Shown: positions 4,900 to 50,990 of the stretch, piece after piece
How positions within the stretch are numbered: position 1 is the first letter of the stretch
Layout: every line of letters starts with the position of its first letter
Virus record (IMG/VR): IMGVR_UViG_3300032236_000747
Span: 290,681 to 354,680 of that record
Reading direction: 5' to 3' (one strand)
DNA: 64,000 bases
Program-made: the position numbers and the translations under genes
Notes under the pieces: generated by a model
What the model was told of the DNA's origin: nothing
Database searches by the model: none
The model's input: the letters and a program-made list of their open reading frames with translations, nothing else

Positions 4900-6522
4900 A
4901 TGACAACGAGAATTAAACAAAGACGCGACACAGCGGCAAACTGGTTAGGTTATAACCCAATTCTAGCACTGGGAGAAACAGGCTGGGAAACTGATACCGG
5001 CCGCGTAAAAATAGGCGACGGATCCTCAAACTGGCAAACCCTACAGTATGCAGTAGGTGGCGCAGGACACGGACTAGGTGGTGCTATTCAAATAGGAACG
5101 GTATGTACATCTGGTTCATATTGCGGTTGTTGTAATAACTCAGTGGCTATTGGCACAGGTGCTGGTTCTTGCTGTAGATGCAGCGGCCCGTCGATCGCTA
5201 TAGGACACGATGCAGGACATTGCAAACAACATGGATCTGCGATCGCAATTGGTCGCCAGGCAGGGCGTTGTTGCCAAGCTATGAATACAATAGCCATGGG
5301 TCGTTATGCTGGCTCATACGGTCAAAACTACGGTGCTGTTGCTATTGGTAAGTATGCTGGCAACTATGGTCAACAATCATATGGAGTAGCCATTGGGTAT
5401 GGTGCTCAAAACGGTTATGGTGGATGTAATGCTGTTGCCATCGGACATTATGCAGGCAGCTATGGGCAAAATACTTCTGCCGTAGCTATTGGACATCAAG
5501 CAGGTTCCTGTTGTCAAGGATATCGATCAGTTAGTATTGGACGTTGGGCAGGCCAGTGTTGTCAGTGCTACCAGTCAGTGGCTATCGGTGCATTGGCAGG
5601 AAGAGAATATCAAGGCGAGTGTTCGGTTGCTATCGGTCGTCATGCTGGTCTTGTAAATCAAGGTTCCAACTCTGTAGCTATCGGACATCAAGCAGGACAG
5701 GGATTAGGCGATAGTCAGTACTATTGTCACATAAACGCAACTTATGTATCTGGTGGTGCTAGTGGAGCTACAACATTTGTAGTCAATACTGTTGCAGGCA
5801 TTCACCCAGGTATGTATCCTGAAGGTGCTAACCTTGGCCCTCAAAAGGTCACAGCAGTTAACACAGCAACCAACGAAATCACTTTAGATTTTGGTACCTT
5901 TGGACAGTTAAGTGGTACATACTATTTCTACGGTGCTCAAGGTAGTAATGCTGTTGCTATTGGTGCATATGCTGGTCTTTCAGTTCAACAAGATAATAGC
6001 ATTATTATCAACGCTACAGGCATTGAAGTAAATTCAGCAGGTACAGGCACAACGGTAATTAAACCAGTTGCGCCAACTACTACTGGTAATCCTTTGTATT
6101 ATAATGCCGACACTGGTCAAATTACCTACGGTACTGTTAATCGTTATGTCAGCACTGCTACCAGTACACCTGTCAATGCCCCTGTAATTGATATAACTAG
6201 TAGTAAGGTATTCCTAGCACCGCTATCTGGTGGTAATGCCAGCTATGTAATACCAGGGAATGGATTATATGACGGACAAACTATTGAATTCTACCCACAA
6301 TGGGTCTCTGGCACAAATAACACAGATGTAGCGAACATCTTTATCTATGTGTCAAATATATTTGATATTAATTCAGGAAACGGTCAATACTCCGGTGGCG
6401 GATACTACAACTGGTATCCATTCCAAACTTATAACACAACAGGTGCCGCGAAAGGTACCGCAACTTGGGATGCCCACCAACAACATTGGGTGATTGATCC
6501 AGGTTGGACCAAGTTTGATTAA
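4900..6522 (+). CDS. Tail fibre: Mtd_N-like N-terminus plus Cys-rich YadA-head-like 14-residue repeats
   Basis: RIKQRRDTAANW...GETGWETDTGRVKIGDG N-terminus; repeated AVAIGxxAG units. Confidence 0.8.
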   Translation: MTTRIKQRRDTAANWLGYNPILALGETGWETDTGRVKIGDGSSNWQTLQYAVGGAGHGLGGAIQIGTVCTSGSYCGCCNNSVAIGTGAGSCCRCSGPSIAIGHDAGHCKQHGSAIAIGRQAGRCCQAMNTIAMGRYAGSYGQNYGAVAIGKYAGNYGQQSYGVAIGYGAQNGYGGCNAVAIGHYAGSYGQNTSAVAIGHQAGSCCQGYRSVSIGRWAGQCCQCYQSVAIGALAGREYQGECSVAIGRHAGLVNQGSNSVAIGHQAGQGLGDSQYYCHINATYVSGGASGATTFVVNTVAGIHPGMYPEGANLGPQKVTAVNTATNEITLDFGTFGQLSGTYYFYGAQGSNAVAIGAYAGLSVQQDNSIIINATGIEVNSAGTGTTVIKPVAPTTTGNPLYYNADTGQITYGTVNRYVSTATSTPVNAPVIDITSSKVFLAPLSGGNASYVIPGNGLYDGQTIEFYPQWVSGTNNTDVANIFIYVSNIFDINSGNGQYSGGGYYNWYPFQTYNTTGAAKGTATWDAHQQHWVIDPGWTKFD

Positions 6523-9598: not shown

Positions 9599-12500
9599 AT
9601 GGCCTTCATTCAGAAGTTATTCACAACACTACAAAACTACGATAATGGCGATACTCGTATTGGCGAGCTCAACCGTATTTGGTATGACTCTAATCGTAAT
9701 GCCTTCTACATATCTGACGGCCAAACAGAAGGCGGTATACTAATTGGTGGCGGTGGTGGTGGCGGAACTTACACACTATTAACAGCAACTACTACCCGCC
9801 TAGGTGGTGTTAGAATCGGTGCTGGTATTCAAGTTGATTATCGCGGTGTTATTAGTGTAAACACATCTACGCTAGCAGGACCACAAGGTCCTAAAGGCGA
9901 CACTGGTCCTAAAGGGGATACTGGAACACAAGGATCAGTTGGGGCTCAAGGCGATCCCGGTATAGGAGTTCCTGTCGGCGGCGTTGCTGGACAAGTGCTG
10001 GCTAAAATTGACGGTGTTGATTATAATACATATTGGGTTGATCAAACTGGTGGTACAGGTAATGGTAGCGTAATACAAAGTGATATAGCTCCTACTCCTG
10101 CAAATACTACGACTCTTTGGTATGATACAGTAGGCGGTCGTAGTTATGTGTATTATTACGGGGGTTGGGTTGACGCTAGCCCAGGAATAGGCGGGATACC
10201 TGGACCAAAAGGCGATACAGGTACGCAAGGACCTACTGGACTACAAGGAGACATAGGTCCAAAAGGTGATACAGGTACTCAGGGACTAATAGGTCCAATG
10301 GGTCCGAAAGGCGATACAGGTACTCGAGGCCTTACTGGTGATATAGGCCCAGTTGGACCAAAGGGAGATACCGGAACACAGGGATTGATAGGACCAACAG
10401 GACCTAAAGGGGACACTGGTACACAAGGTATTCAAGGACCGATTGGTCTAACTGGAAACACTGGAACACAGGGTATACAAGGAATTCCGGGCGAAGGCGT
10501 TCCGGTAGGCGGAACTGCCGGGCAAGTATTAACCAAGATTGACGGTGTTGATTACAATACACACTGGGTTGATGCTAATTTTTCTAGTTCAACTGCTACT
10601 GCTGGTGTAAGTGATATTACCGCAGGGACAGGAACTTATGTATCTGCTAATACAGGTTCAGTGAGCATCTGGGTTGATCCAAACGTAGTCGAAGGCACGG
10701 TAGCTCCTGCATCTACAGCTTCATTTTGGTATGATACTAATGTAGGTCGACTATTCATATATTATAATGGGTCTTGGATTGATGCTAGTCCGGGAACTAC
10801 TGGTATACCTGGTCCAAAGGGAGACACTGGAACTACTGGTCCAACTGGACTACAGGGAGATATTGGCCCTAAAGGTGATACCGGTACAGCAGCTACCCTA
10901 GTTATAGGAACAGTTACCTTAGGAACTTATACAAGTGTAATTAATGTAGGCGATCAATACAATGCTGTGTTTGACTTTGTATTACAGCAAGGACCTAAAG
11001 GTGATGCTGGGCTCAAAGGCGACACAGGAACCACAGGTGCAACTGGCGCACAAGGACCTAAAGGTGATACTGGCACCCAAGGAATACAAGGCATACAAGG
11101 TTTTCAGGGAATACAAGGCATTAAAGGTGATACTGGCACCACCGGAGCAACTGGTGCTACAGGCAGTGTTGGTCCAAAAGGTGATACCGGTACACAGGGT
11201 ATTCAAGGTATTCAGGGACCAAAAGGCGATACAGGAACTACCGGCGCACAAGGTATCCAAGGCATACAAGGTATCCAGGGCGTAACGGGTAGTACAGGTA
11301 CTCAAGGACCAAAAGGCGATACTGGCTCAATTGGCATAGCTACATTAAATTTAGGCACAGGTACATACGGCACACTAACATCGCAGACATTAAGTTTATG
11401 GATCGGCCAAGATGTTTCTGCTACAAGTAATGTAACATTTAACTCTGTGGCTATTAGTAATCTTGGTAGCATTTTATCATCTCAAGTAAACATTGATGCA
11501 TTTATTACAGTCTATACCTTAACTAATGTTGTTGACTATAGTTCTACTGCTACTTTGGCATCGGGTGTTTACGGTAACATCAATGGAGTTCAACCTCCGT
11601 GGACTGTATTTGATCTAAGTCCCGGACCTTCAGGTACTCCTGTAAGTACTATTGCTATTAACGATAAACTAACAGGTGCTGGTATTATTCCTAGTACCGT
11701 AGAAGATCGCGGCACCGGAACTTATGCATCTTATGTTATTGTTAATTTAGATCTAGCTGGCCTAGGACAGATACAACCTTTAGTTGGGGCGGCATTTAAC
11801 CTTGTACGCCCACTACAAAAAGCTGGCTTGGACATTACTACACAAAACAACACAGACATTTTCCTAAACAGCAATGGTCTAGGTGATGTACTAGTTAACA
11901 CCAACATTCTACCAGTTGCCACCAATGTAAGTAATTTAGGAAGTCCAGACTTTAGATGGAAGAGTTTGTATGTTGGCCCAGGTACTATCTATGTCTTAGA
12001 TGAAACATTAGGCAAAGATATTAGCATTGGCGCTCGTGACGGACTACTATATGTACAAAACGGTGCTGGGCTTGTAGTAGGTGAGTTTACTCTTATTGAC
12101 AATCAGATTAAGATTGCCAATCCCGATCGTGATATTATTATTGGAACTACTACTGCTACAGGTAGTGTAGTATTAAATCGTCCTATTAGAGTTAACACAC
12201 TAGCAGGACAAACTTCATTTAGTGTAGATAGACTAGGTCTAACTACAATCCACCCACTTATCTCAATGAGCTCTACTCAATCAGCATTGAATATTGTGGG
12301 CAACACTAGCGGACTACAGCAACCTCGTAATTTTAACGATACAATGTTGCAGATTACAGGTGCAGACAATACTGCTACTCGTGTAAGTTTAGATTCATTT
12401 GGTACAGGCACATATCCAGTTATTGCTGGTCGTCAAGCAGGCGGAACAGTAGCGTCTCCAAGTCAAACAAAATTAAACGATACGCTGTTAAGATTTAGTG

Positions 12501-15500
12501 CCCAGGGTTGGGGGACTACAGGATATGTAAGTACTATTGCTCGTATAAACATGCGAGCTCTACAAGATTTTACTGACACCGCCGCAGGCACAGGAATACG
12601 TTTTCAATTAACTCCTATAAACACAACTACAATACAAACTGTTACAGTAGACATCACTGCTACAGGTATAAGTTTTGTTGGTAACTCTATTGGCGGAATC
12701 ACATTCAGTAACAATGACAGACTAACTTACTTCCCAACACCTGTGGGACAAGCCGGCTTATATTTAAAGTCAGATGGTACTACAATGAGTTGGCAAACAG
12801 GAGGTGCTGGCGCCAAAGGTGATACCGGTACAGCAGCTACAATTACAATAGGTACTGTTACAGTTTCTACAACTACAGCAAGTGTAACCAATGTAGGTAA
12901 CTCTAGTAGTGCTATACTTAATTTTGTCTTACAACAAGGTCCACAAGGTATCCAGGGAGCTACCGGTAGCACAGGAACACAGGGACCCAAAGGCGATACA
13001 GGTACTACTGGCGCACAGGGCATACAAGGTATTCAAGGCATTCAGGGAGCAACCGGAACCAGTGCGACAGTTATGGTTGGACTAGTTACTACAGGTTCAA
13101 CAGCTCTAGTTACTAACACAGGAACAAGTGCTAACGCGGTACTTAACTTCCAAATTCCATGGATACCGGGCCCACAGGGCGCAACTGGTGCTACGGGAAG
13201 TACAGGTACACAAGGACCTAAAGGGGATACCGGAACACAGGGTATTCAAGGACCTATTGGGCCAACTGGAACATTTACAGGTAGTGTAGTTACTCTAGCA
13301 TCTGCTGATACTGCGGCACTGACTTATACATCATCAACTGGCATATTCTCATTCACTCCTAACAATGTCTATAAGACATTGTCTAGTTTAAGTGATGTTA
13401 ATGTTCCAGCACCCGGCAACAATCAAGTACTAACCTGGAGTACCGGCACTAATCGTTGGATTCCTACAACAGTAAACGGTGTTGGTGTTCCTATTACAGG
13501 TATTGCCTACTATGGTACATTCTACGACGTGGGCGCGGATCAAACAGCGCCACTGACAACCAGCAGTTATGTTGTAAGAATAGATCACACTGACGGTAGC
13601 AATGGCATCAGCATTGTTGACAATAATCAAATAACATTTGCCTACGGCGGAACTTATGAAGTAGAGTTTAGCATACAGTTCCAAAATACAGATACTAAAG
13701 ATGCCACTGTTAGTGTATGGTTTAGAAAGAACGGCGCAGACATAGCAGATTCAAACAGCATATTCACAGCGCCAAGTAAGCAAAACGGTAATGGATTCTT
13801 GATAGCAGTCACTCCGTTTATCGTCACAGTCAACGCCGGCGACTATGTACAGATTATGTGGTCAAGTGACAATACAGTAACCAAAATCGTCACAACAGCG
13901 GCTGGAACTACCCCAACTGTTCCACGCACACCGGGCGTTATTATCACAGTGGTGCCGGTTACCTCAGTGGTTATCCCAGGCACCGTTGAGAGTTTAACAG
14001 TAACGGGCAATGCCAGTGCCAATAACTTTATCTCAGCGTATCTGCCCATAGTGTCAAGTGGTACTACTACTGTGCTGTCTGTTACAAGTCCGCACTATAT
14101 ATCAGTAAGTGGTGTATCAACACAGACTATCAAACTGCCAAACGCTACCTTATTGACTGTAGGACAAAGTTACAAGATTGACAACAACTCAAGTGGCAAT
14201 GTTTACATACAAGATGCTACTGGTGCTCAGATTGGCGGTGCTCTGTTACCGGGTGCGGCCACTGAAGGTAGAGTTATTAATGTAGGTACAACAGCAGGCA
14301 CATGGGATGGTTGGAACTATGTTCCTGGCAATGTATCATTTGGCACAAGTCAGATGGTGTTTACTGGCGGGACCATTGTAGCCAGCACATTCACTGGTAG
14401 TTTAGTAGGTACTGCTACCACAGCAACCTACGCACAATCATTTAATACTGCGACTCTAGTAACTACTGCTGTTAGTGCTACTACTGCCACTAACGCTGGT
14501 TACGCATATTCATTTAATACAAACACAGTCGTAACTACAGCAGTTACAGCAACTAACGCTGGGTATGCCTACTCGTTCAACACATCAACCCTAGTATTGA
14601 AAGCAACTACAGCTACACTGGCACAAACTGTTACTGCGGCCGCACAGCCTGCTATCACAAGTGTAGGAACACTAACAAGTCTATCACTTCAGGGCAGTAT
14701 AACATTTAATGATGCCACTACACAATCTACAGCATGGACTGGTAGTACATATAGAATAATCAAAGTTGCTGACGGTTTTGGAGTAGGCCTACCATTCCAG
14801 TCTTATGTAACTGCTGATACCAGCACAGGCATTATTGTTTCCGCATTAACTGGTATTCCAGCAAGCCCTACATATAAAACTTGGACATTTGGGTTTGACG
14901 GAGTCTTAACATTCCCAGATAACTCAACACAAACAGTTGCGTGGAATACAAGCACAGCAGTTTATTATTCACAGATAAGGAATGCGCCTTCTACTACAGG
15001 CACAGCAGTATTCAATATTGTTAGTGCTACTAACATAACAGTTGGCGGAACAACAATACAAAACTTGTTTAGTGTATCAACAGCTACAGTGAGCAATACT
15101 GCTACTAGTCTTGTCTATAATACTAGCACCGGTGTTTATACATTTACACCATTTAGTCTAAACACCAGTACACTAATGGCTCGAGCTGTCACTGTTACAA
15201 GTTCAACACAAGCGGCTATTACCGCACTTGGTACATTAACGTCTCTATCAGTTAGCGGAGCATCAACAGTTAGTGGGCTTGCTACCTTTAACTATACAGG
15301 CGGTGGATCAACTTCAACTATTTCTGTCAGTGGGCAAAATAGCAAAGGTGGCGCACTATATCACGACTTCCTAAGTGCTACTAACGGGTTAGCCACTGCT
15401 ACCAATGCTACCAAATATTTCCGTCTAAACAACGTAGGCACCTTAGAAATATTGAATAGTGCTTATAATGCAACTGTATTCTCAGTAACTGATAACGGAT

Positions 15501-16525
15501 ATATTGCTATCAATGCGGCATCCGGTGTTTCAAACGGTTTGCCTGGTAATAATGCTATAGCGATGAATAACAACAGTTACATCTACGATGATGGTAACTA
15601 TCACCTTACAAGTAAGTCTGGTAGCATTTGGATCAATGCCAACGGTGGTAATGATGTTAATATAAACACACAAGTCCCTAGTGGTACTATGCCAGGCGGG
15701 TTGAATGTACAGGGTGCTATAACAAGTCAAGGCTCTGGTACAGCCGCTACATCGTTTATATCAGGTGTAAACGCATATAGTGGCGTAGCACTACAGCTGA
15801 CTCCAAACGGTACAGGTGCGGCAAACCAAGCTATTCGTGATACATCAAGTGCGGCAAGCACAATGTATTTTGACGTTAATACTGGTGGTAGTGCTCACGG
15901 CCAATTCCAATTTAGATCAAGCAATGCGTTTAGTCAACTCTTGGTTGTAAGTAATAGTGCCGTAACAGTTAACAGACAAATGTTGATAGGTGGTGGTAGT
16001 CAAGGCGCCTATGTTACTATTAACGGAACAAACACTTACAACATCAATGGGCCTTTTGGATACTTAAACGGTGGCGGCGCAGGCGCCATCAACAGCAGTG
16101 GATCAACGGGTAATCAAGGGTTTTCATTACAATGTAGTGGACGTATTCAAGCTAATGAAGTTGACGTTCCTTCAGACGAACGATTAAAAGACATACAGGG
16201 CACTATTCCTTTAGATAAGGCACTACAGTTTGTTCGAGCCGTAGATGGTATCTTGTATACTTGGAAGCCAGGATTTGGCGACAACGGATTAAAGTCAGGG
16301 TTTAATGCTCAAGGTGTATACAAAGCTGGATTTGATCATATGGTTGTTCCTGTGCCAAATGATCGTGTAGCGGGTTCAACTGATGCTGATGGATTTACAA
16401 GCCCAGATAAGTTCCAATTAAGTTTAAACTATCAAGAAGCTATCCCATATCATCACGAAGTTATCAAGCACTTGCTAGATCGTATTGAGCAGCTAGAAGC
16501 TACAGTAGCCAAGTTAACTAAATAA
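9599..16525 (+). CDS. Giant collagen-like tail fibre with C-terminal peptidase S74 intramolecular chaperone
   Basis: Several G-X-Y tracts (GPKGDTG repeats), duplicated modules, C-terminal SDERLKDI...GFNAQ...LNYQ and coiled coil. Confidence 0.9.
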   Translation: MAFIQKLFTTLQNYDNGDTRIGELNRIWYDSNRNAFYISDGQTEGGILIGGGGGGGTYTLLTATTTRLGGVRIGAGIQVDYRGVISVNTSTLAGPQGPKGDTGPKGDTGTQGSVGAQGDPGIGVPVGGVAGQVLAKIDGVDYNTYWVDQTGGTGNGSVIQSDIAPTPANTTTLWYDTVGGRSYVYYYGGWVDASPGIGGIPGPKGDTGTQGPTGLQGDIGPKGDTGTQGLIGPMGPKGDTGTRGLTGDIGPVGPKGDTGTQGLIGPTGPKGDTGTQGIQGPIGLTGNTGTQGIQGIPGEGVPVGGTAGQVLTKIDGVDYNTHWVDANFSSSTATAGVSDITAGTGTYVSANTGSVSIWVDPNVVEGTVAPASTASFWYDTNVGRLFIYYNGSWIDASPGTTGIPGPKGDTGTTGPTGLQGDIGPKGDTGTAATLVIGTVTLGTYTSVINVGDQYNAVFDFVLQQGPKGDAGLKGDTGTTGATGAQGPKGDTGTQGIQGIQGFQGIQGIKGDTGTTGATGATGSVGPKGDTGTQGIQGIQGPKGDTGTTGAQGIQGIQGIQGVTGSTGTQGPKGDTGSIGIATLNLGTGTYGTLTSQTLSLWIGQDVSATSNVTFNSVAISNLGSILSSQVNIDAFITVYTLTNVVDYSSTATLASGVYGNINGVQPPWTVFDLSPGPSGTPVSTIAINDKLTGAGIIPSTVEDRGTGTYASYVIVNLDLAGLGQIQPLVGAAFNLVRPLQKAGLDITTQNNTDIFLNSNGLGDVLVNTNILPVATNVSNLGSPDFRWKSLYVGPGTIYVLDETLGKDISIGARDGLLYVQNGAGLVVGEFTLIDNQIKIANPDRDIIIGTTTATGSVVLNRPIRVNTLAGQTSFSVDRLGLTTIHPLISMSSTQSALNIVGNTSGLQQPRNFNDTMLQITGADNTATRVSLDSFGTGTYPVIAGRQAGGTVASPSQTKLNDTLLRFSAQGWGTTGYVSTIARINMRALQDFTDTAAGTGIRFQLTPINTTTIQTVTVDITATGISFVGNSIGGITFSNNDRLTYFPTPVGQAGLYLKSDGTTMSWQTGGAGAKGDTGTAATITIGTVTVSTTTASVTNVGNSSSAILNFVLQQGPQGIQGATGSTGTQGPKGDTGTTGAQGIQGIQGIQGATGTSATVMVGLVTTGSTALVTNTGTSANAVLNFQIPWIPGPQGATGATGSTGTQGPKGDTGTQGIQGPIGPTGTFTGSVVTLASADTAALTYTSSTGIFSFTPNNVYKTLSSLSDVNVPAPGNNQVLTWSTGTNRWIPTTVNGVGVPITGIAYYGTFYDVGADQTAPLTTSSYVVRIDHTDGSNGISIVDNNQITFAYGGTYEVEFSIQFQNTDTKDATVSVWFRKNGADIADSNSIFTAPSKQNGNGFLIAVTPFIVTVNAGDYVQIMWSSDNTVTKIVTTAAGTTPTVPRTPGVIITVVPVTSVVIPGTVESLTVTGNASANNFISAYLPIVSSGTTTVLSVTSPHYISVSGVSTQTIKLPNATLLTVGQSYKIDNNSSGNVYIQDATGAQIGGALLPGAATEGRVINVGTTAGTWDGWNYVPGNVSFGTSQMVFTGGTIVASTFTGSLVGTATTATYAQSFNTATLVTTAVSATTATNAGYAYSFNTNTVVTTAVTATNAGYAYSFNTSTLVLKATTATLAQTVTAAAQPAITSVGTLTSLSLQGSITFNDATTQSTAWTGSTYRIIKVADGFGVGLPFQSYVTADTSTGIIVSALTGIPASPTYKTWTFGFDGVLTFPDNSTQTVAWNTSTAVYYSQIRNAPSTTGTAVFNIVSATNITVGGTTIQNLFSVSTATVSNTATSLVYNTSTGVYTFTPFSLNTSTLMARAVTVTSSTQAAITALGTLTSLSVSGASTVSGLATFNYTGGGSTSTISVSGQNSKGGALYHDFLSATNGLATATNATKYFRLNNVGTLEILNSAYNATVFSVTDNGYIAINAASGVSNGLPGNNAIAMNNNSYIYDDGNYHLTSKSGSIWINANGGNDVNINTQVPSGTMPGGLNVQGAITSQGSGTAATSFISGVNAYSGVALQLTPNGTGAANQAIRDTSSAASTMYFDVNTGGSAHGQFQFRSSNAFSQLLVVSNSAVTVNRQMLIGGGSQGAYVTINGTNTYNINGPFGYLNGGGAGAINSSGSTGNQGFSLQCSGRIQANEVDVPSDERLKDIQGTIPLDKALQFVRAVDGILYTWKPGFGDNGLKSGFNAQGVYKAGFDHMVVPVPNDRVAGSTDADGFTSPDKFQLSLNYQEAIPYHHEVIKHLLDRIEQLEATVAKLTK

Positions 16526-29215: not shown

Positions 29216-30964
29216 ATGGCTGTTATAGAGATTGCTAAGATACAAGTACGCAGAGGAAATGAAGGTGATGTTGGAATGCCTCAACTCGACAGCGGTGAGT
29301 TCGGTTGGGCTATAGACACACAAACACTTTACATCGGTAATGGTAGTGTAGCAGAAGGAGCGCCAGCAGTTGGCAATACAGAGGTTATTACAGCTAATAA
29401 CATATCAAACTTCTTTAACTTAAATGCTGTTTATACATACGGATCTAGCTACGGAAATCCGTATTCTATTGTAGATTCAAACATAAGAAAAGCTGTTACT
29501 AGATCTGTTTCGTCAAAGTTAGATGACTTTGTTAATGTTGTAGACTTTGGCGCAGTAGCAGACTGGAACGGAGTTAGTGGTACTGATAATACACAAGCGT
29601 TTCAAACAGCGATAGATAACCTATATCTAACAAACACATCTACAAATGGTCAGCTATTAAGAATACCAGCAGGTACTTATTATATTGCCGGAACTATATA
29701 CGTACCACCTAACGCTACTATAACAGGTGACGGACCCGACAAGACTGTACTAGTAGGTGTTTCTGGAAGTAACCCATTGATTCAACTATGCGACGGTAGC
29801 AGCCCAGGCAACGGATCATATATTATATTTGTACCAGGGCAGGTTAATATAACAGGACCCGGAAAACCAACTAACATATATATAGAAGGAATGACCTTCA
29901 CCTATACTACAGATCCTAGTTCTTTCAGTCCATTAACATCTTATTCTCCTTTGTTAAGCCTGGACTGTGTTACAACTTGCCGAGTCGTCAACTGTAAGTT
30001 TTTAGGATTATATACAGCACAAACTATATACACTAGCGATACTAACGACCAATATAATGGATACACCGGTATAGACATCAGGAGTCAAGGTACTTCTATT
30101 AGTGTACTAACTTCGGATAATATATTGATTAAAGATTGTGTGTTTATTGGATTAAAATACGGTATCACTTCAAACTATAACTGTTCTGATATACTGATTG
30201 TTAATAACCTATTTGAAATATTGAATAGGGGAGTTAACTGGGCAACCAACCTTGCTAACTACAACACAGAAGGTCCTATTAGATCAAGAATCAATAGTAA
30301 TATTTTTGACTACATTTATAACGAAGGTATCTACGCAGGATCTAGTATTAATCAAACACAGCACATATCTAGTTTTAACTCGTTTTTTACAGTAGGAACA
30401 CACTTAGATAGCGCACCATTTGACGATACAAATGCCATTACACCTAGTATTAGATTTAACAGCGCAGGTAACGTATCTGTTGAAGATAAGTTTTATAGAG
30501 ACGAAAAGGTAGCAAGACTAACAACGGCCCCTACAAAATATGTACCTAGTATACTAGGTAAGGTATCTGTGTCATCTAATGTAGCATACACCAAGACTTG
30601 GGATATAACCGGCATTCCAACTTTGCCAACGGCACTAGTCTATATTCCATATGCTGGCAATGATCAAACAATCAACATACCTTATCTATATACTACATCC
30701 GGTGTTGGGGCTACTCCTAATGTGTATGTGACTAGAAAAGGAGTACTGTCAATATCTGTTTCTACTATAGCAGGAGCAGGACCACAACCAGTAACTGATA
30801 CATTTACATACACCTATACAGGTGGTGGTGGCACTGACCCGGAACCATTAAACGGTTTAACATTTACAGCAACGTTGGATACCACAGGCAACTTTATCAA
30901 AGTAGCCTACACAGGTAACTACAACGCAGGCACAATAGAATATCAATACAACTATCTAGGTTAA
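29216..30964 (+). CDS. Tail/baseplate protein with pectate-lyase-like beta-helix (putative depolymerase)
   Basis: IQVRRG..GEFGWAIDTQTLYIGNG N-terminus; VNVVDFGA..DNTQAFQTAID..IPAGTY motif. Confidence 0.75.
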   Translation: MAVIEIAKIQVRRGNEGDVGMPQLDSGEFGWAIDTQTLYIGNGSVAEGAPAVGNTEVITANNISNFFNLNAVYTYGSSYGNPYSIVDSNIRKAVTRSVSSKLDDFVNVVDFGAVADWNGVSGTDNTQAFQTAIDNLYLTNTSTNGQLLRIPAGTYYIAGTIYVPPNATITGDGPDKTVLVGVSGSNPLIQLCDGSSPGNGSYIIFVPGQVNITGPGKPTNIYIEGMTFTYTTDPSSFSPLTSYSPLLSLDCVTTCRVVNCKFLGLYTAQTIYTSDTNDQYNGYTGIDIRSQGTSISVLTSDNILIKDCVFIGLKYGITSNYNCSDILIVNNLFEILNRGVNWATNLANYNTEGPIRSRINSNIFDYIYNEGIYAGSSINQTQHISSFNSFFTVGTHLDSAPFDDTNAITPSIRFNSAGNVSVEDKFYRDEKVARLTTAPTKYVPSILGKVSVSSNVAYTKTWDITGIPTLPTALVYIPYAGNDQTINIPYLYTTSGVGATPNVYVTRKGVLSISVSTIAGAGPQPVTDTFTYTYTGGGGTDPEPLNGLTFTATLDTTGNFIKVAYTGNYNAGTIEYQYNYLG

Positions 30965-37486: not shown

Positions 37487-37515
37487 TTGACAACATTCCT
37501 TGATTGTTGTATAAT
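37487..37515 (+). promoter_or_regulatory. Sigma70 promoter for the tmRNA precursor
   Basis: TTGACA-N17-TATAAT perfect consensus. Confidence 0.9.
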
Positions 37516-37520
37516 AAAAG

Positions 37521-37586
37521 TTATTGCTGTATGAAGCAAAGAGAAAAGTGTTCTGGACGCGGGTTCGACTCCCGCCAGGTCCACCA
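37521..37586 (+). ncRNA. ssrA: Permuted two-piece tmRNA, acceptor piece
   Basis: T-arm GCGGG-TTCGACT-CCCGC, acceptor 3' strand CAGGTCC-A-CCA. Confidence 0.93.
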
Positions 37587-37597
37587 TAAGGAAGTTT

Positions 37598-37840
37598 GTG
37601 AAAGAGTATTACATAGTTAATGGTAAAAAGTGTAAAAGAGATTCATTGCAAGATGACCTCATTTGGTCCATGAAACAATCCGATAACACTTTCAAACATT
37701 ATTGGATAGACGAACAGCAAGGATTAGGAAACAGTCACGGTGGACAATATATGCCTCCGTGGATTATGAATCGTAATCGTTATGTTGTTGATGATTTTGG
37801 AACGGTTGTAAAATATCTTCCATACAAAGTTTCTTTATGA
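37598..37840 (+). CDS. 80-aa ORF inside the tmRNA intervening segment
   Basis: AAGGA RBS plus GTG right after CCA; stop ends 1 nt before tmRNA G1. Confidence 0.7.
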   Translation: MKEYYIVNGKKCKRDSLQDDLIWSMKQSDNTFKHYWIDEQQGLGNSHGGQYMPPWIMNRNRYVVDDFGTVVKYLPYKVSL

Positions 37841-37841
37841 T

Positions 37842-38030
37842 GGGCCTGCCATGGTTTCGACAGGGCAAAGAGTAACAGAGTGGACAGCAGGGCAAAGCAG
37901 AAGCCCTTAGGGTTGGGGATTCCCGGCCGTAGACGCAAAAAAAGTAAATGCAAACGACTCACAGTTTCTAATGGTTGCCTGATAAAGGCTTCCGGGGTAG
38001 GAAATACCTTGCAACAGAAAATAACAGAAC
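37842..38030 (+). ncRNA. ssrA: Permuted two-piece tmRNA, coding piece; tag ANDSQFLMVA*
   Basis: GGGCCTG pairs with CAGGTCC giving G3.U70; GGTTTCGAC; TAAAT-GCA resume at 37950; TGA TAA at 37980-85; 3' end approximate. Confidence 0.92.
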
Positions 38031-38049
38031 CCGCTTCGGCGGGTTTCTT
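38026..38049. terminator. Bidirectional Rho-independent terminator
   Basis: AACCCGC-TTCG-GCGGGTT between convergent transcripts. Confidence 0.85.
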
Positions 38050-38728
38050 ATGTTTTCTTAGAAGCCCATTGTTTAACTGCTGGATAGTATGTTGTAAACA
38101 GTTGATGACGTTTTTTGATTTCAGCAGCAGGCGCAGCTTTTCCATTAATGGCTCTTGTAACTGAAGCAGTATCAGCAAAGTCCTTTATACGTCTTTTAAC
38201 ATTTTGATCCCAAAACCATTTAGCAATCTTTGCCGCTTCGTGGGGATCTGCTGCCTTACTAGGATGTTCAACATAATATGATTCATCGCCATGCACGCCT
38301 GCGCCAGCAGCAATATAGTTACCCTTGCCTGTTAACTGAATGAATCCACGTCCGGCATATTCCAAAGCATCATTTGCGCCTTGGTTACCTGTGCTACGTG
38401 CATATTTGTGAGCTGCTTTATTAGGCCGACCTATCTCGCCGAGGTGTTTAAAGTTACCTGTTTCTGCGCTACACTGTGCTAGAAACTGTGCTAGTTCTGT
38501 TGGCTCGGTCATACCGCTGTTAATAGCATGTGAAGACAGTATTTTACGTGCTACATCGGCATCAACTTTTGGTGCTTGAACTAGTGGTTGCACTTTTGTA
38601 CTACGTGGATCTATTTTTTGGGGATGTTGAACAGGCTTGGCTTGTGCTATACCTGCTGCCATTGCGGCTGCTCCACCAAGGAATCCCCTGCGTGTTAAAT
38701 CTTCTCTAGTAATTTCGTATATTCGCAT
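38048..38728 (-). CDS. Glycoside hydrolase family 19 (endolysin/chitinase-like) with twin-arginine-like N-terminus
   Basis: FLAQCSAETG and YAGRGFIQLTGKGNY motifs; TRRGFLGG; TAAATA-N4-ATG. Confidence 0.88.
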   Translation of the reverse strand: MRIYEITREDLTRRGFLGGAAAMAAGIAQAKPVQHPQKIDPRSTKVQPLVQAPKVDADVARKILSSHAINSGMTEPTELAQFLAQCSAETGNFKHLGEIGRPNKAAHKYARSTGNQGANDALEYAGRGFIQLTGKGNYIAAGAGVHGDESYYVEHPSKAADPHEAAKIAKWFWDQNVKRRIKDFADTASVTRAINGKAAPAAEIKKRHQLFTTYYPAVKQWASKKT

Positions 38729-38757
38729 CAAGTATTTAGTTATGGATAAAAGATGAC

Positions 38758-50674: not shown

Positions 50675-50923
50675 ATGACCTACGCTGAATATTTCGACCT
50701 AGTAACCTATAAAGCAACATATCACCTAGGTGATAGAATCATAGGTAAGCATAATGGTATTCCATTTGTAGGCACTGTTGGCAATGATAGACAACTTAAT
50801 CCAACGGAAGGTCCACGTATTAGTGTTCATTTAGATTTGCCATTAAAGGTTGACGGAACAGTTAAATGTGTTATACTAGTTAAACACAAAGATGTTAAAC
50901 GTCTTAAAGAATTAAGCGTCTGA
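50675..50923 (+). CDS. Hypothetical SH3-like small protein
   Basis: 82 aa; last 8 nt overlap tRNA 5' end. Confidence 0.6.
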   Translation: MTYAEYFDLVTYKATYHLGDRIIGKHNGIPFVGTVGNDRQLNPTEGPRISVHLDLPLKVDGTVKCVILVKHKDVKRLKELSV

Positions 50924-50990
50924 GGCTAAGTGGTATTGCAAGGGCTTCTAAAACCCGAGACAGCAGGTTCGAACCCTGTCAGGCGCACCA
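50916..50990 (+). tRNA. tRNA with CUA anticodon (amber suppressor-like)
   Basis: 75 nt; GCGTCTG/CAGGCGC-ACCA acceptor; D-loop AGTGGTA; loop TTCTAAA; T-loop TTCGAAC; anticodon stem only 3 WC pairs. Confidence 0.75.

What the first reader, a model, noticed from the sequence alone, without database searches (positions are those of the whole stretch)
37487..38049. Phage-encoded circularly permuted (two-piece) tmRNA
Seen: promoter, then the 3' acceptor piece ending CCA (37586), then an intervening segment, then the 5' piece starting GGGCCTG (37842) with the G3.U70 alanine identity pair, a tag frame and a terminator. Known: permuted tmRNAs occur in Alphaproteobacteria and some cyanobacterial and betaproteobacterial lineages. 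A phage-borne permuted form is unusual, and ORF-only annotation would miss it.
Basis: partly seen in the sequence, partly recalled or inferred. Interest (0 to 1): 0.8.

Follow-up and report, generated by a model that had tools for sequence, protein, structure and literature searches.

The report
Phage two-piece tmRNA carrying a gene
A giant lake phage carries a genuine split (two-piece) ribosome-rescue RNA gene, which is already known in phages, but the "spacer" between its two halves holds a real small protein gene, and in related phages the same slot holds dozens of different small genes.

Summary
Window 37487-38052 (+) holds a complete circularly permuted tmRNA gene (ARAGORN tmRNA*; Rfam RF04321, 106.9 bits against a threshold of 47). 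It has a perfect sigma-70 promoter, an acceptor piece ending in CCA at 37586, a coding piece starting at G37842 with G3.U70, a tag frame and a terminator. The window is part of a 354,680-bp IMG/VR phage contig.

A phage-borne permuted tmRNA is not rare. It is published for Melnitz and is annotated in Menderavirus genomes. I found at least 145 IMG/VR loci of this same beta-type lineage.

A Shine-Dalgarno site follows CCA directly. An 80-codon ORF (37598-37840) follows it, and its UGA stop ends 1 nt before the predicted RNase P site. The ORF has free-standing homologues elsewhere.

Across the lineage, 20 of 22 unique IVSs of 120 nt or more carry such an ORF (0.83 expected by chance). These ORFs fall into about 30 unrelated families, one of them a thioredoxin, with dN/dS mostly 0.1-0.25. 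A covarying 11-bp stem closes every IVS and is weaker where an ORF is present. Cargo changes almost at random on the neighbouring NrdB tree.

Processing, alanine charging and translation are inferred, not shown.

The parts
37487..37515 (+). Sigma-70 consensus promoter (TTGACA, 17 nt, TATAAT). The transcription start is inferred at about 37520-37523.
   Evidence: 12/12 match. It belongs to an array of 14 near-consensus promoters, all on the + strand, against 0.97 expected.
37520..37586 (+). Acceptor piece of the two-piece tmRNA. It comprises the 5' strand of helix P2, T-arm 37559-37575, acceptor 3' strand 37576-37582, discriminator A37583 and encoded CCA 37584-37586.
   Evidence: ARAGORN tmRNA*. 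Rfam RF04321 alignment. Sequence. A 65-nt contig from an RNA library spans exactly 37522-37586, but a contig end may be an assembly branch point.
37587..37841 (+). Intervening sequence (IVS, 255 nt), which is removed from the mature tmRNA. Its closing stem pairs 37587-37597 with 37827-37837. The 4-nt leader UGAU is 37838-37841, and the predicted RNase P site lies between U37841 and G37842.
   Evidence: The stem appears in the minimum-free-energy fold of the precursor. Across 89 unique IVSs, 92% of the stem cells are paired, against 41-59% in slid registers. RNAalifold finds 9 pairs with compensatory double changes in 55 sequences.
37588..37593 (+). Shine-Dalgarno sequence (AAGGAA) for the IVS gene. 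It lies on the 5' strand of the closing stem, directly after CCA.
   Evidence: Sequence. An SD-like motif occurs in the first 14 nt of 29 of 39 ORF-bearing IVSs against 4 of 50 ORF-less IVSs.
37598..37840 (+). ORF80, an 80-aa protein gene inside the IVS. It starts with GTG. Its stop is UGA 37838-37840, 1 nt before G1 of the coding piece. The protein family is uncharacterised.
   Evidence: ORF listing. An ORF filling 80% or more of this IVS arises in 0.5% of dinucleotide shuffles. Homologues P0003 (51% identity, E 5e-21), P0004 and P0006 are ordinary free-standing genes with no tmRNA nearby. 13 columns of the alignment are invariant.
37842..38052 (+). Coding piece of the tmRNA. It comprises acceptor 5' strand 37842-37848 (G3 is 37844), the D-loop analogue and P2 3' strand, and the tag frame 37935 or 37950 to 37979, followed by stops at 37980-37985.
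   Evidence: Tags of relatives follow AND..[FY].[LM][AV]A.
38027..38052 (+). Intrinsic terminator (8-bp stem with 5 G-C pairs, then a U run). It works in both directions and is shared with the convergent endolysin gene 38048-38731 (-).
   Evidence: The terminator is conserved in L145 although the tag region has diverged.

Best explanation
This is an early-expressed phage gene for a beta-type two-piece tmRNA whose excised intervening sequence doubles as the messenger for a small protein.

Proposed mechanism:
1. Host sigma-70 RNA polymerase makes a precursor of about 530 nt, running from about 37520 to 38052.
2. The two tRNA-like half-strands pair (37576-82 with 37842-48). An 11-bp stem (37587-97 with 37827-37) closes the IVS.
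3. RNase P cuts before G37842, and 3' trimming exposes the encoded CCA at 37586.
4. The two pieces stay base-paired. They are charged with alanine (G3.U70, A73), and with host SmpB they rescue stalled ribosomes, adding a tag such as ANDSQFLMVA.
5. The 255-nt IVS carries its own Shine-Dalgarno site, a GTG start and a stop that abuts the RNase P site. It encodes an 80-aa protein of unknown function.
6. Translation most likely starts on the nascent transcript, before the 3' strand of the closing stem is made and sequesters the SD. Alternatively it starts on the released IVS.

In this phage lineage the IVS acts as an exchangeable slot. The near-invariant tmRNA halves flank it, and different phages carry different small genes there, or none.

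Shown here: the gene anatomy, membership of the tmRNA family, covariation of the stem, the coding nature of ORF80 and of the cargo in relatives, and the turnover of cargo.

Inferred: transcription start, processing, aminoacylation, tagging, translation and its timing.
For: The tmRNA is genuine. Relatives with a short IVS pass the betaproteobacterial model RF01850 at 110-135 bits against a threshold of 84. Tags in relatives keep a degron-like form. The T-stem shows a compensatory change in L145.

It is an early gene: consensus promoter. There is no promoter or terminator on the + strand inside the IVS.

ORF80 is a real gene:
- SD at the right spacing, and the ORF fills 95% of the IVS (P about 0.005).
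- HMMER homologues occur as ordinary genes in phage-like gene arrays without any tmRNA.
- The IVS is 97% identical in L145, while the tag and pseudoknot part of that tmRNA has diverged.

The pattern holds across the lineage:
- 20 of 22 unique IVSs of 120 nt or more have an ORF starting within 30 nt of CCA and covering at least 80%, against 0.83 expected. IVSs under 80 nt show no excess.
- The cargo includes a thioredoxin (PF00085, E 4e-21) and a member of phrog_13558 (E 1e-12).
- There are about 52 unique ORF-bearing IVSs in about 30 families, up to 133 aa. dN/dS is 0.11-0.23 in all but one pair of the 123-aa family (0.40 in a pair with five differences), and 0.08-0.24 in three smaller families.
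- In 41 cases the stop is the UGA of the UGAU leader.

Stem: covariation. Stems are weaker in ORF-bearing IVSs, median -6.3 against -12.3 kcal/mol, p = 9e-14.

Turnover:
- Some coding pieces are 96-100% identical while their IVSs differ.
- Two IVSs hold tandem cassettes.
- More than 50 loci share nrdB-grx-p113 synteny.
- Cargo needs 20 changes on the NrdB tree, against a shuffled mean of 21.4. The window's own clade is otherwise free of ORFs that fit inside the IVS.

RNA libraries from lakes hold contigs spanning the acceptor piece, ORF80 and the coding piece at word depth up to 94.
Against: - No experiment or read-level data shows processing, charging, tagging or translation.
- The RNA-library evidence comes from assembled contigs. 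It may include DNA, and contig ends coincide with points where relatives diverge.
- ORF80 has no known family, fold or function.
- Between the window and L145 there are only 3 synonymous and 3 non-synonymous changes plus loss of the stop codon (TGA to TGC). Selection on this particular ORF is therefore weakly documented, and the stop is dispensable in some relatives.
- The SD lies within the closing stem, which could block initiation.
- The window fails the beta_tmRNA model on its own (30.2 bits against 84).
- Whether the phage or its host supplies SmpB was not examined.
- The loci were found with exact patterns. The second pattern selected for SD-bearing IVSs, so frequencies are not population estimates.
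Confidence: 0.75

Rival explanations
1. The tmRNA is functional but the IVS is only a long spacer. On this view ORF80 is a chance or decayed reading frame that is never translated.
For: ORF80 matches no Pfam or PHROG family. The structure model is poor, with pLDDT 48. The stop codon is lost in close relatives. The SD is base-paired in the predicted precursor fold.
Against: Free-standing homologues at 39-72% identity share 13 invariant columns. The ORF fills the IVS with P about 0.005. The same SD, ORF and UGA layout recurs in about 50 other IVSs, with dN/dS mostly 0.1-0.25 and one a clear thioredoxin. The IVS is the best-conserved part between the window and L145.
Confidence: 0.07
2. The locus is mainly an expression and processing platform for small early proteins. 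The tRNA-like halves serve as RNase P and 3'-end processing signals and as recombination anchors. Ribosome rescue by the phage tmRNA is weak, lost, or acts as a decoy on the host system.
For: The tRNA-like parts are nearly invariant (an identical 26-mer and 20-mer in more than 100 phages), while the tag and pseudoknot region varies widely, even between the window and L145. A CDS-less phage tmRNA that inhibits the host tmRNA is on record (phage DS6A, cited in PMC11915505). The window's tag ends in MVA rather than LAA.
Against: About half of the lineage has an ORF-less IVS yet keeps the whole tmRNA. Tags keep the AND... start, the hydrophobic-plus-alanine end and double stops across relatives. 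Relatives with a short IVS pass the full beta_tmRNA model, including the mRNA-like domain.
Confidence: 0.13
3. The element is not a working phage gene. It would be a remnant of host ssrA picked up by imprecise prophage excision, or an attachment-site fragment.
For: tmRNA genes are common prophage integration sites, and ssrA fragments occur in prophages (PMC9004378, PMC11915505).
Against: The gene is complete, with its own consensus promoter and terminator. It keeps a fixed place after nrdB-grx-p113 in more than 50 related phage contigs. The exact acceptor 26-mer was found in no permuted tmRNA among 185,579 bacterial species genomes; all 21 hits were standard tmRNA genes, tRNA-Ala genes or, in one case, no RNA gene call. 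No integrase was seen near it.
Confidence: 0.03

Closest known systems
Two-piece (circularly permuted) tmRNA of Betaproteobacteria (Rfam RF01850; merged permuted model RF04321)
   Same: Acceptor piece lies before coding piece. The tRNA-like domain has G3.U70, A73 and an encoded CCA. The tag is of the AND..F..AA type. Relatives with a short IVS score 110-135 bits on RF01850, and the window scores 106.9 bits on RF04321.
   Different: It is carried by a phage. The exact acceptor 26-mer was seen in no bacterial permuted tmRNA. The IVS is 255 nt and protein-coding, against about 24 nt in the Rfam consensus. The window alone scores only 30.2 bits on RF01850.
Phage-borne two-piece tmRNAs: Methylophilales phage Melnitz and pelagimyophages (PMC9004378); Menderavirus and Xanthomonas phages
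   Same: They are permuted ssrA genes in lytic phages, near early promoters and nucleotide-metabolism genes. In Melnitz another functional element, a predicted glutamine riboswitch, rides in the ssrA gene.
   Different: Melnitz is reported as alpha-type. The cultured Xanthomonas and Stenotrophomonas phage IVSs examined here (86-127 nt) are G+C-rich hairpins without an SD or a convincing ORF. I found no report of a protein gene in the IVS.
tmRNA genes interrupted by group I introns, some carrying homing-endonuclease ORFs (PMC11915505: 36 of 883)
   Same: A protein-coding ORF lies inside a tmRNA gene, in RNA that is removed from the mature molecule.
   Different: The intron sits in the T-loop of a standard-order gene and splices itself, and its ORF is a mobility enzyme. 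Here the ORF sits at the permutation junction. Removal is by ordinary tRNA-end processing. No intron model matches. The cargo is diverse and is not endonucleases.
Permuted tmRNA with an intact tRNA-Ala gene in its IVS (noted as unique in PMC11915505)
   Same: A separate functional gene is lodged in the IVS of a permuted tmRNA.
   Different: That cargo is an RNA gene in a single MAG. Here the cargo is protein-coding, recurrent and of many families.
Dual-function RNA genes (SgrS/SgrT, RNAIII/hld) and small ORFs interspersed in phage tRNA clusters or T4 hyperplastic regions (from my own knowledge, not checked here)
   Same: One transcript yields both a structured functional RNA and a small protein. 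Small phage ORFans are shuffled between conserved, structured boundaries.
   Different: In dual-function sRNAs the same mature RNA does both jobs. Here the coding part is the excised segment, and the two flanking halves must re-associate as one RNA machine.

Membership tests
tmRNA (SsrA) | tRNA-like domain: 7-bp acceptor stem with G3.U70, discriminator A, 3' CCA, T-arm with a GTTCGA-type loop | tested here: met
   G37842-G37848 pairs with C37576-C37582. G37844.U37580 is present, as are A37583, CCA 37584-86 and T-arm 37559-75.
tmRNA, permuted (two-piece) form, Rfam RF04321 | Acceptor (3') piece encoded upstream of the coding (5') piece, and a score at or above the curated threshold | tested here: met
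   ARAGORN reports tmRNA*. RF04321 scores 106.9 bits against 47, over model positions 1-213.
tmRNA (SsrA) | Internal tag reading frame that resumes on an alanine codon and ends in stop codon(s), with a degron-like C-terminus | tested here: met
   The frame 37935 or 37950 to 37979 gives (AKKVN)ANDSQFLMVA followed by UGA UAA. Relatives read AND..[FY].[LM][AV]A. Which GCA is the resume codon is not settled.
tmRNA (SsrA) | Maturation into two base-paired pieces, alanine charging, and SmpB-dependent tagging | not testable with these tools
   Contigs from RNA libraries cover the locus, including one spanning 37522-37586. Contig ends may reflect assembly branching, and DNA carry-over is not excluded.
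Betaproteobacterial two-piece tmRNA, Rfam RF01850 | Score at or above the gathering threshold of 84 bits on the full beta model | tested here: inconclusive
   The window scores 30.2 bits, for the 3' part only, because the 255-nt IVS splits the match. Syntenic relatives with a short IVS (L069, L079, L014) score 110.6-134.9 bits.
Intron-form tmRNA with homing endonuclease | Group I intron inserted in the T-loop, with an endonuclease ORF | tested here: not met
   The T-loop is uninterrupted. No intron family matches at gathering score or at E up to 1. ORF80 has no endonuclease domain.
ORF80 protein family (unnamed, uncharacterised) | Shared conserved core (G.G..HG...PPW ... V.DD.G) with significant sequence similarity | tested here: met
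   phmmer gives P0003 at 4.7e-21, P0004 at 3.1e-16 and P0006 at 7e-4. The alignment has 13 invariant columns. The homologues are free-standing genes with no tmRNA nearby.
Thioredoxin (cargo of relatives L055, L178 and L197, not of the window) | Pfam PF00085 above threshold, with the WCGPC motif | tested here: met
   L055 IVS ORF: 75.4 bits against 23.5, E 4e-21, WCGPC present. phrog_22 matches at 2e-13.

The most novel reading that the evidence does not exclude
In a widespread lineage of freshwater phages, the intervening sequence of a two-piece tmRNA gene may have become a dedicated, exchangeable expression slot for small early proteins. Cargo translation and tmRNA maturation would then be mechanically coupled.

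The basis for coupling is anatomical. The Shine-Dalgarno site forms one strand of the processing stem. The stop codon is the UGA of the RNase P leader. Each precursor would therefore yield one rescue RNA plus a short, self-limiting burst of protein. In variants that have lost the stop codon, the released messenger would be a non-stop substrate for the very tmRNA it came from.
Probability: 0.35. Interest if true: 0.8.

Novelty: new variant of a known kind. Interest (0 to 1): 0.62.

Why it matters
Two-piece tmRNA genes have been catalogued by the thousand. In the 2025 census (PMC11915505), a single tRNA gene inside an IVS was singled out as unique. Here the IVS of a phage tmRNA lineage regularly holds protein genes of about 30 families, with a fixed layout of SD, stem and stop. 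This has three consequences.

1. Annotation pipelines miss or mis-call these genes. The window's ORF80 relatives were called as 96-98-aa fusions running into the tmRNA.
2. It gives a compact natural system for testing how RNA processing and translation compete on one transcript.
3. It marks a hot spot where small early "host-takeover" genes are swapped between phages, flanked by near-invariant RNA halves.

It also shows that phage tmRNAs of the beta type form a large clade of their own rather than being recent captures from hosts.

Tried and rejected
1. Function of ORF80. Pfam, PHROGs, a profile search of the PDB and the ESM Atlas gave nothing usable. AlphaFold on a 5-sequence alignment gave pLDDT 48 and pTM 0.29, so no fold search was run.

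2. Close relatives among cultured phages. There are none. blastn found only the roughly 70-nt acceptor piece in Stenotrophomonas and Xanthomonas phages.

3. Bacterial counterpart. The exact acceptor 26-mer hit 21 bacterial contigs, none with a permuted tmRNA.

4. RNA evidence for processing. Lake metatranscriptome contigs cover the locus, but they are assemblies whose ends coincide with points of divergence between relatives, and no silent control stretch could be laid. I therefore count them only as presence in RNA libraries.

5. TAG recoding, suggested by the CUA tRNA. Rejected for this window, because reading TAG as sense lengthens ORFs no more than reading TGA or TAA as sense.

6. A 13-member cargo "family" was discarded as an artefact. 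Its ORFs run into the tmRNA 5' strand and share only that translated stretch.

7. The flank motifs are not generic signals of this genome. Each has a single exact match in the window, at the IVS; the only other hits carry 1-2 mismatches and are no more than chance.

8. Literature. Four full-text searches found no description of protein genes in a tmRNA IVS. Sharkady and Williams 2004 could not be opened.

Full report
**Observation**

ARAGORN calls one permuted tmRNA (tmRNA*) at 37494-38073, with tag AKKVNANDSQFLMVA and two stops. Rfam's tmRNA_permuted model (RF04321) matches 37525-37982 at 106.9 bits (gathering score 47, E 7e-20), end to end and with a long insert between the two halves.

The acceptor stem is G37842-G37848 paired with C37576-C37582. 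It includes G37844.U37580 (the G3.U70 pair), discriminator A37583 and the encoded CCA at 37584-37586. The promoter at 37487-37515 is a 12/12 match to TTGACA-17-TATAAT, and an intrinsic terminator lies at 38027-38046. The promoter belongs to an array of 14 near-consensus sites, all on the + strand, against 0.97 expected. The gene is therefore most likely transcribed early by the host polymerase.

By alignment with the Rfam consensus and with relatives, the resume codon is more likely GCA at 37950 (tag ANDSQFLMVA) than ARAGORN's GCA at 37935.

**Context**

The window is phage DNA. It holds tail-fibre and tail-spike proteins, a GH19 endolysin, RIIA and ribonucleotide reductase. Over the 701-nt stretch compared it is identical to IMG/VR contig UViG_3300032236_000747, which is 354,680 bp long, so this is a jumbo phage. 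No cultured phage is close; only the roughly 70-nt acceptor piece matches Stenotrophomonas and Xanthomonas phages. Sequencing runs that hold the stretch are freshwater and lake metagenomes.

**How unusual is a phage-borne permuted tmRNA?**

It is not unusual. PMC9004378 reports that 53 of 133 unique phage tmRNA structures are two-piece and describes one in phage Melnitz. Menderavirus genomes annotate ssrA at a gene that ARAGORN calls permuted, and Xanthomonas phages carry them too.

A second pattern scan gave 87 loci. Together these yield 145 loci with the whole gene and 121 unique IVSs.

The same 26-mer in 185,579 bacterial species genomes hit only standard tmRNA genes, tRNA-Ala genes and one contig with no RNA gene call. 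Relatives with a short IVS pass the betaproteobacterial model RF01850 at 110-135 bits. The window alone scores 30.2 bits because its IVS splits the match. This is therefore a large, phage-resident branch of the beta-type two-piece tmRNA.

**The intervening sequence is a gene**

The IVS (37587-37841, 255 nt) begins with UAAGGAAGUUU immediately after CCA. A GTG follows at 37598, opening an 80-codon frame. Its UGA stop (37838-37840) ends one base before G37842, the predicted RNase P site. An ORF filling at least 80% of this IVS arises in 0.5% of dinucleotide shuffles.

The word-index search found only near-copies. An exhaustive HMMER search found P0003 (51% identity, E 5e-21), P0004 (72% over the C-terminal part) and P0006 (39%). 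These are ordinary genes packed in arrays of small phage-like genes, with no tmRNA nearby. They share 13 invariant columns with ORF80, including the N-terminal residues, which supports the GTG start. ORF80 is thus a member of a real but uncharacterised protein family.

A 3-kb ENA scaffold (L145) carries the same IVS at 97% identity inside a tmRNA whose T-stem has a compensatory change. Its tag (ANASNDEIYALAA) and pseudoknot region have diverged, and its upstream flank is unrelated. In that copy, and in P0002, the stop is TGC, so gene callers produced 96-98-aa products running into the tmRNA.

**The pattern across the lineage**

- Among unique IVSs from the first, unselected scan, 20 of 22 that are 120 nt or longer have an ORF starting within 30 nt of CCA and covering at least 80% (0.83 expected from shuffles). 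For 80-119 nt the count is 20 of 33 (5.4 expected). Below 80 nt it is 5 of 34 (6.3 expected). Long IVSs are long because they are coding.
- The cargo includes a thioredoxin with WCGPC (PF00085, 75 bits, E 4e-21), a member of phrog_13558 (E 1e-12), several single-pass hydrophobic peptides of 22-26 aa, and many ORFans of up to 133 aa.
- After discarding ORFs that merely run into the tmRNA, about 52 unique ORF-bearing IVSs fall into about 30 families.
- dN/dS is 0.11-0.23 in all but one pair of the 123-aa family (0.40 in a pair with only five differences), 0.13 and 0.08 in two smaller families, and 0.16-0.58 for the 24-aa peptides.
- In 41 cases the stop is the UGA of the 4-nt UGAU leader. 38 of 39 ORF-bearing IVSs end in UGAU, against 24 of 50 ORF-less ones. 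An SD-like motif lies in the first 14 nt of 29 of 39 against 4 of 50.

**A conserved stem closes every IVS**

Nucleotides 1-11 after CCA pair with nucleotides -5 to -15 before G1. Across 89 unique IVSs, 92% of these cells are paired, against 41-59% in slid registers, and each position shows three to six pair types. RNAalifold on 55 short IVSs recovers the stem, with 9 pairs showing compensatory double changes. The stem also appears in the minimum-free-energy fold of the window's precursor.

In ORF-bearing IVSs the 5' strand of the stem is the SD and the 3' strand encodes the last residues (often VSL). These stems are weaker, with a median of -6.3 against -12.3 kcal/mol (p = 9e-14; relatedness between sequences was not corrected for). 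The flank motifs have no other exact match in the window; the only other hits carry 1-2 mismatches and are at chance level.

**Turnover of cargo**

More than 50 loci share the order nrdB, glutaredoxin, p157 and/or p113, then tmRNA, with NrdB 70-86% identical to the window's. On an NrdB tree of 39 loci the IVS state needs 20 changes, where the minimum is 12 and the shuffled mean is 21.4, so it is nearly uncorrelated with the tree. Loci with identical NrdB carry different IVSs. The window's well-supported clade (100/100) otherwise has no ORF contained within the IVS; its members' IVSs are 64-108 nt.

Some pairs have coding pieces 96-100% identical while their IVSs differ. L195 holds two cargo genes in tandem, and the junction between them repeats both flank motifs. 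L111 also holds two. The near-invariant tmRNA halves are the obvious homology arms for such exchange, but this is an inference.

**Expression**

Four lake metatranscriptome assemblies contain contigs on the locus. One, at word depth 94, spans 37566-37874 in the L145-like variant. Another spans 37561-37889. A 65-nt contig covers exactly 37522-37586.

These are assemblies, DNA carry-over is not excluded, and contig ends coincide with the places where relatives diverge. I take this only as presence in RNA libraries. It does not prove processing.

**Mechanism proposed**

One early transcript folds so that the two tRNA-like strands and the IVS stem form. RNase P and 3' trimming release a two-piece tmRNA, which is charged with alanine and works with SmpB. 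The IVS messenger is translated either co-transcriptionally, before the stem's 3' strand exists, or after release.

Anatomy, homology, covariation and selection are shown. Every biochemical step is inferred from what is established for two-piece tmRNAs (my own knowledge of Keiler et al. 2000 in Caulobacter, and PMC11915505).

**Comparison with known systems**

The closest known cases are:
- bacterial beta-type two-piece tmRNAs;
- phage two-piece tmRNAs such as that of Melnitz, where a predicted riboswitch rides in the gene;
- intron-form tmRNAs with homing-endonuclease ORFs;
- one permuted tmRNA with a tRNA-Ala gene in its IVS (PMC11915505).

None of these has a recurrent, diverse protein cargo at the permutation junction. 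Four full-text searches found no such report. The library is incomplete, so prior description cannot be excluded.

**Verdict**

The coding IVS, and the slot-like behaviour of that position across a large freshwater phage lineage, make it a new variant of a known kind that deserves experimental follow-up.

Noticed in passing
window 50916-50987 (+): A tRNA-like gene (Rfam tRNA, 46 bits) has the anticodon loop UUCUAAA, so its anticodon is CUA, an amber suppressor. ARAGORN misses it here but calls tRNA (cta) near the tmRNA in related jumbo contigs L007, L013, L052, L066 and L080. None of the 57 plus-strand ORFs of 100 aa or more ends in TAG (45 TAA, 12 TGA). Controls show no sign that TAG is read as sense in this window. 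A link between read-through of host stops and the need for extra ribosome rescue is only a thought.
   Followed up: partly
window 28432-63079 (+): There are 14 sites matching TTGACA-N17-TATAAT with at most one mismatch, all on the + strand, against 0.97 expected. This is a dense array of host-type promoters through the region of small genes.
   Followed up: partly
window 38048-38731 (-): The GH19 endolysin converges on the tmRNA terminator. Its N-terminus (…TRRGFLGGAAAMAAGIAQA) looks like a twin-arginine export signal.
   Followed up: no
window 37840; L145:2395-2400; P0001, P0002: In close relatives the ORF80 stop is TGC instead of TGA, so the frame runs into the tmRNA 5' strand. In P0002 it stays open and in frame up to the tag's own stop. 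After RNase P cleavage such an IVS would be a non-stop messenger. The same variant appears in an RNA-library contig (run X17).
   Followed up: partly
L195 IVS (376 nt); L111 IVS (273 nt): Two cargo ORFs sit in tandem within one IVS. In L195 the junction repeats the 3' flank motif followed by the 5' flank motif with its own SD, as if cassettes were stacked.
   Followed up: partly
window 37780-38178 (-) and 37880-38164 (+): Mechanical ORFs of 132 and 94 aa overlap the tmRNA coding piece. They are almost certainly spurious and would mislead ORF-only annotation.
   Followed up: no
window 4900-6522 and 29216-30964 (+): Two tail-fibre-like proteins start with the Mtd_N domain (major tropism determinant N-terminal domain). 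I did not look for a diversity-generating retroelement.
   Followed up: no
window 9599-16525 (+): A 2308-aa ORF was not examined.
   Followed up: no
L024, L027, L116, L012, L114, L045, L052 IVSs (83-89 nt): A family of 22-24-aa hydrophobic single-pass peptides (for example MNDNLG.LAIGV.VVLV.FALVLL) is encoded in otherwise short IVSs. It is conserved at the protein level, with dN/dS 0.16-0.58.
   Followed up: partly
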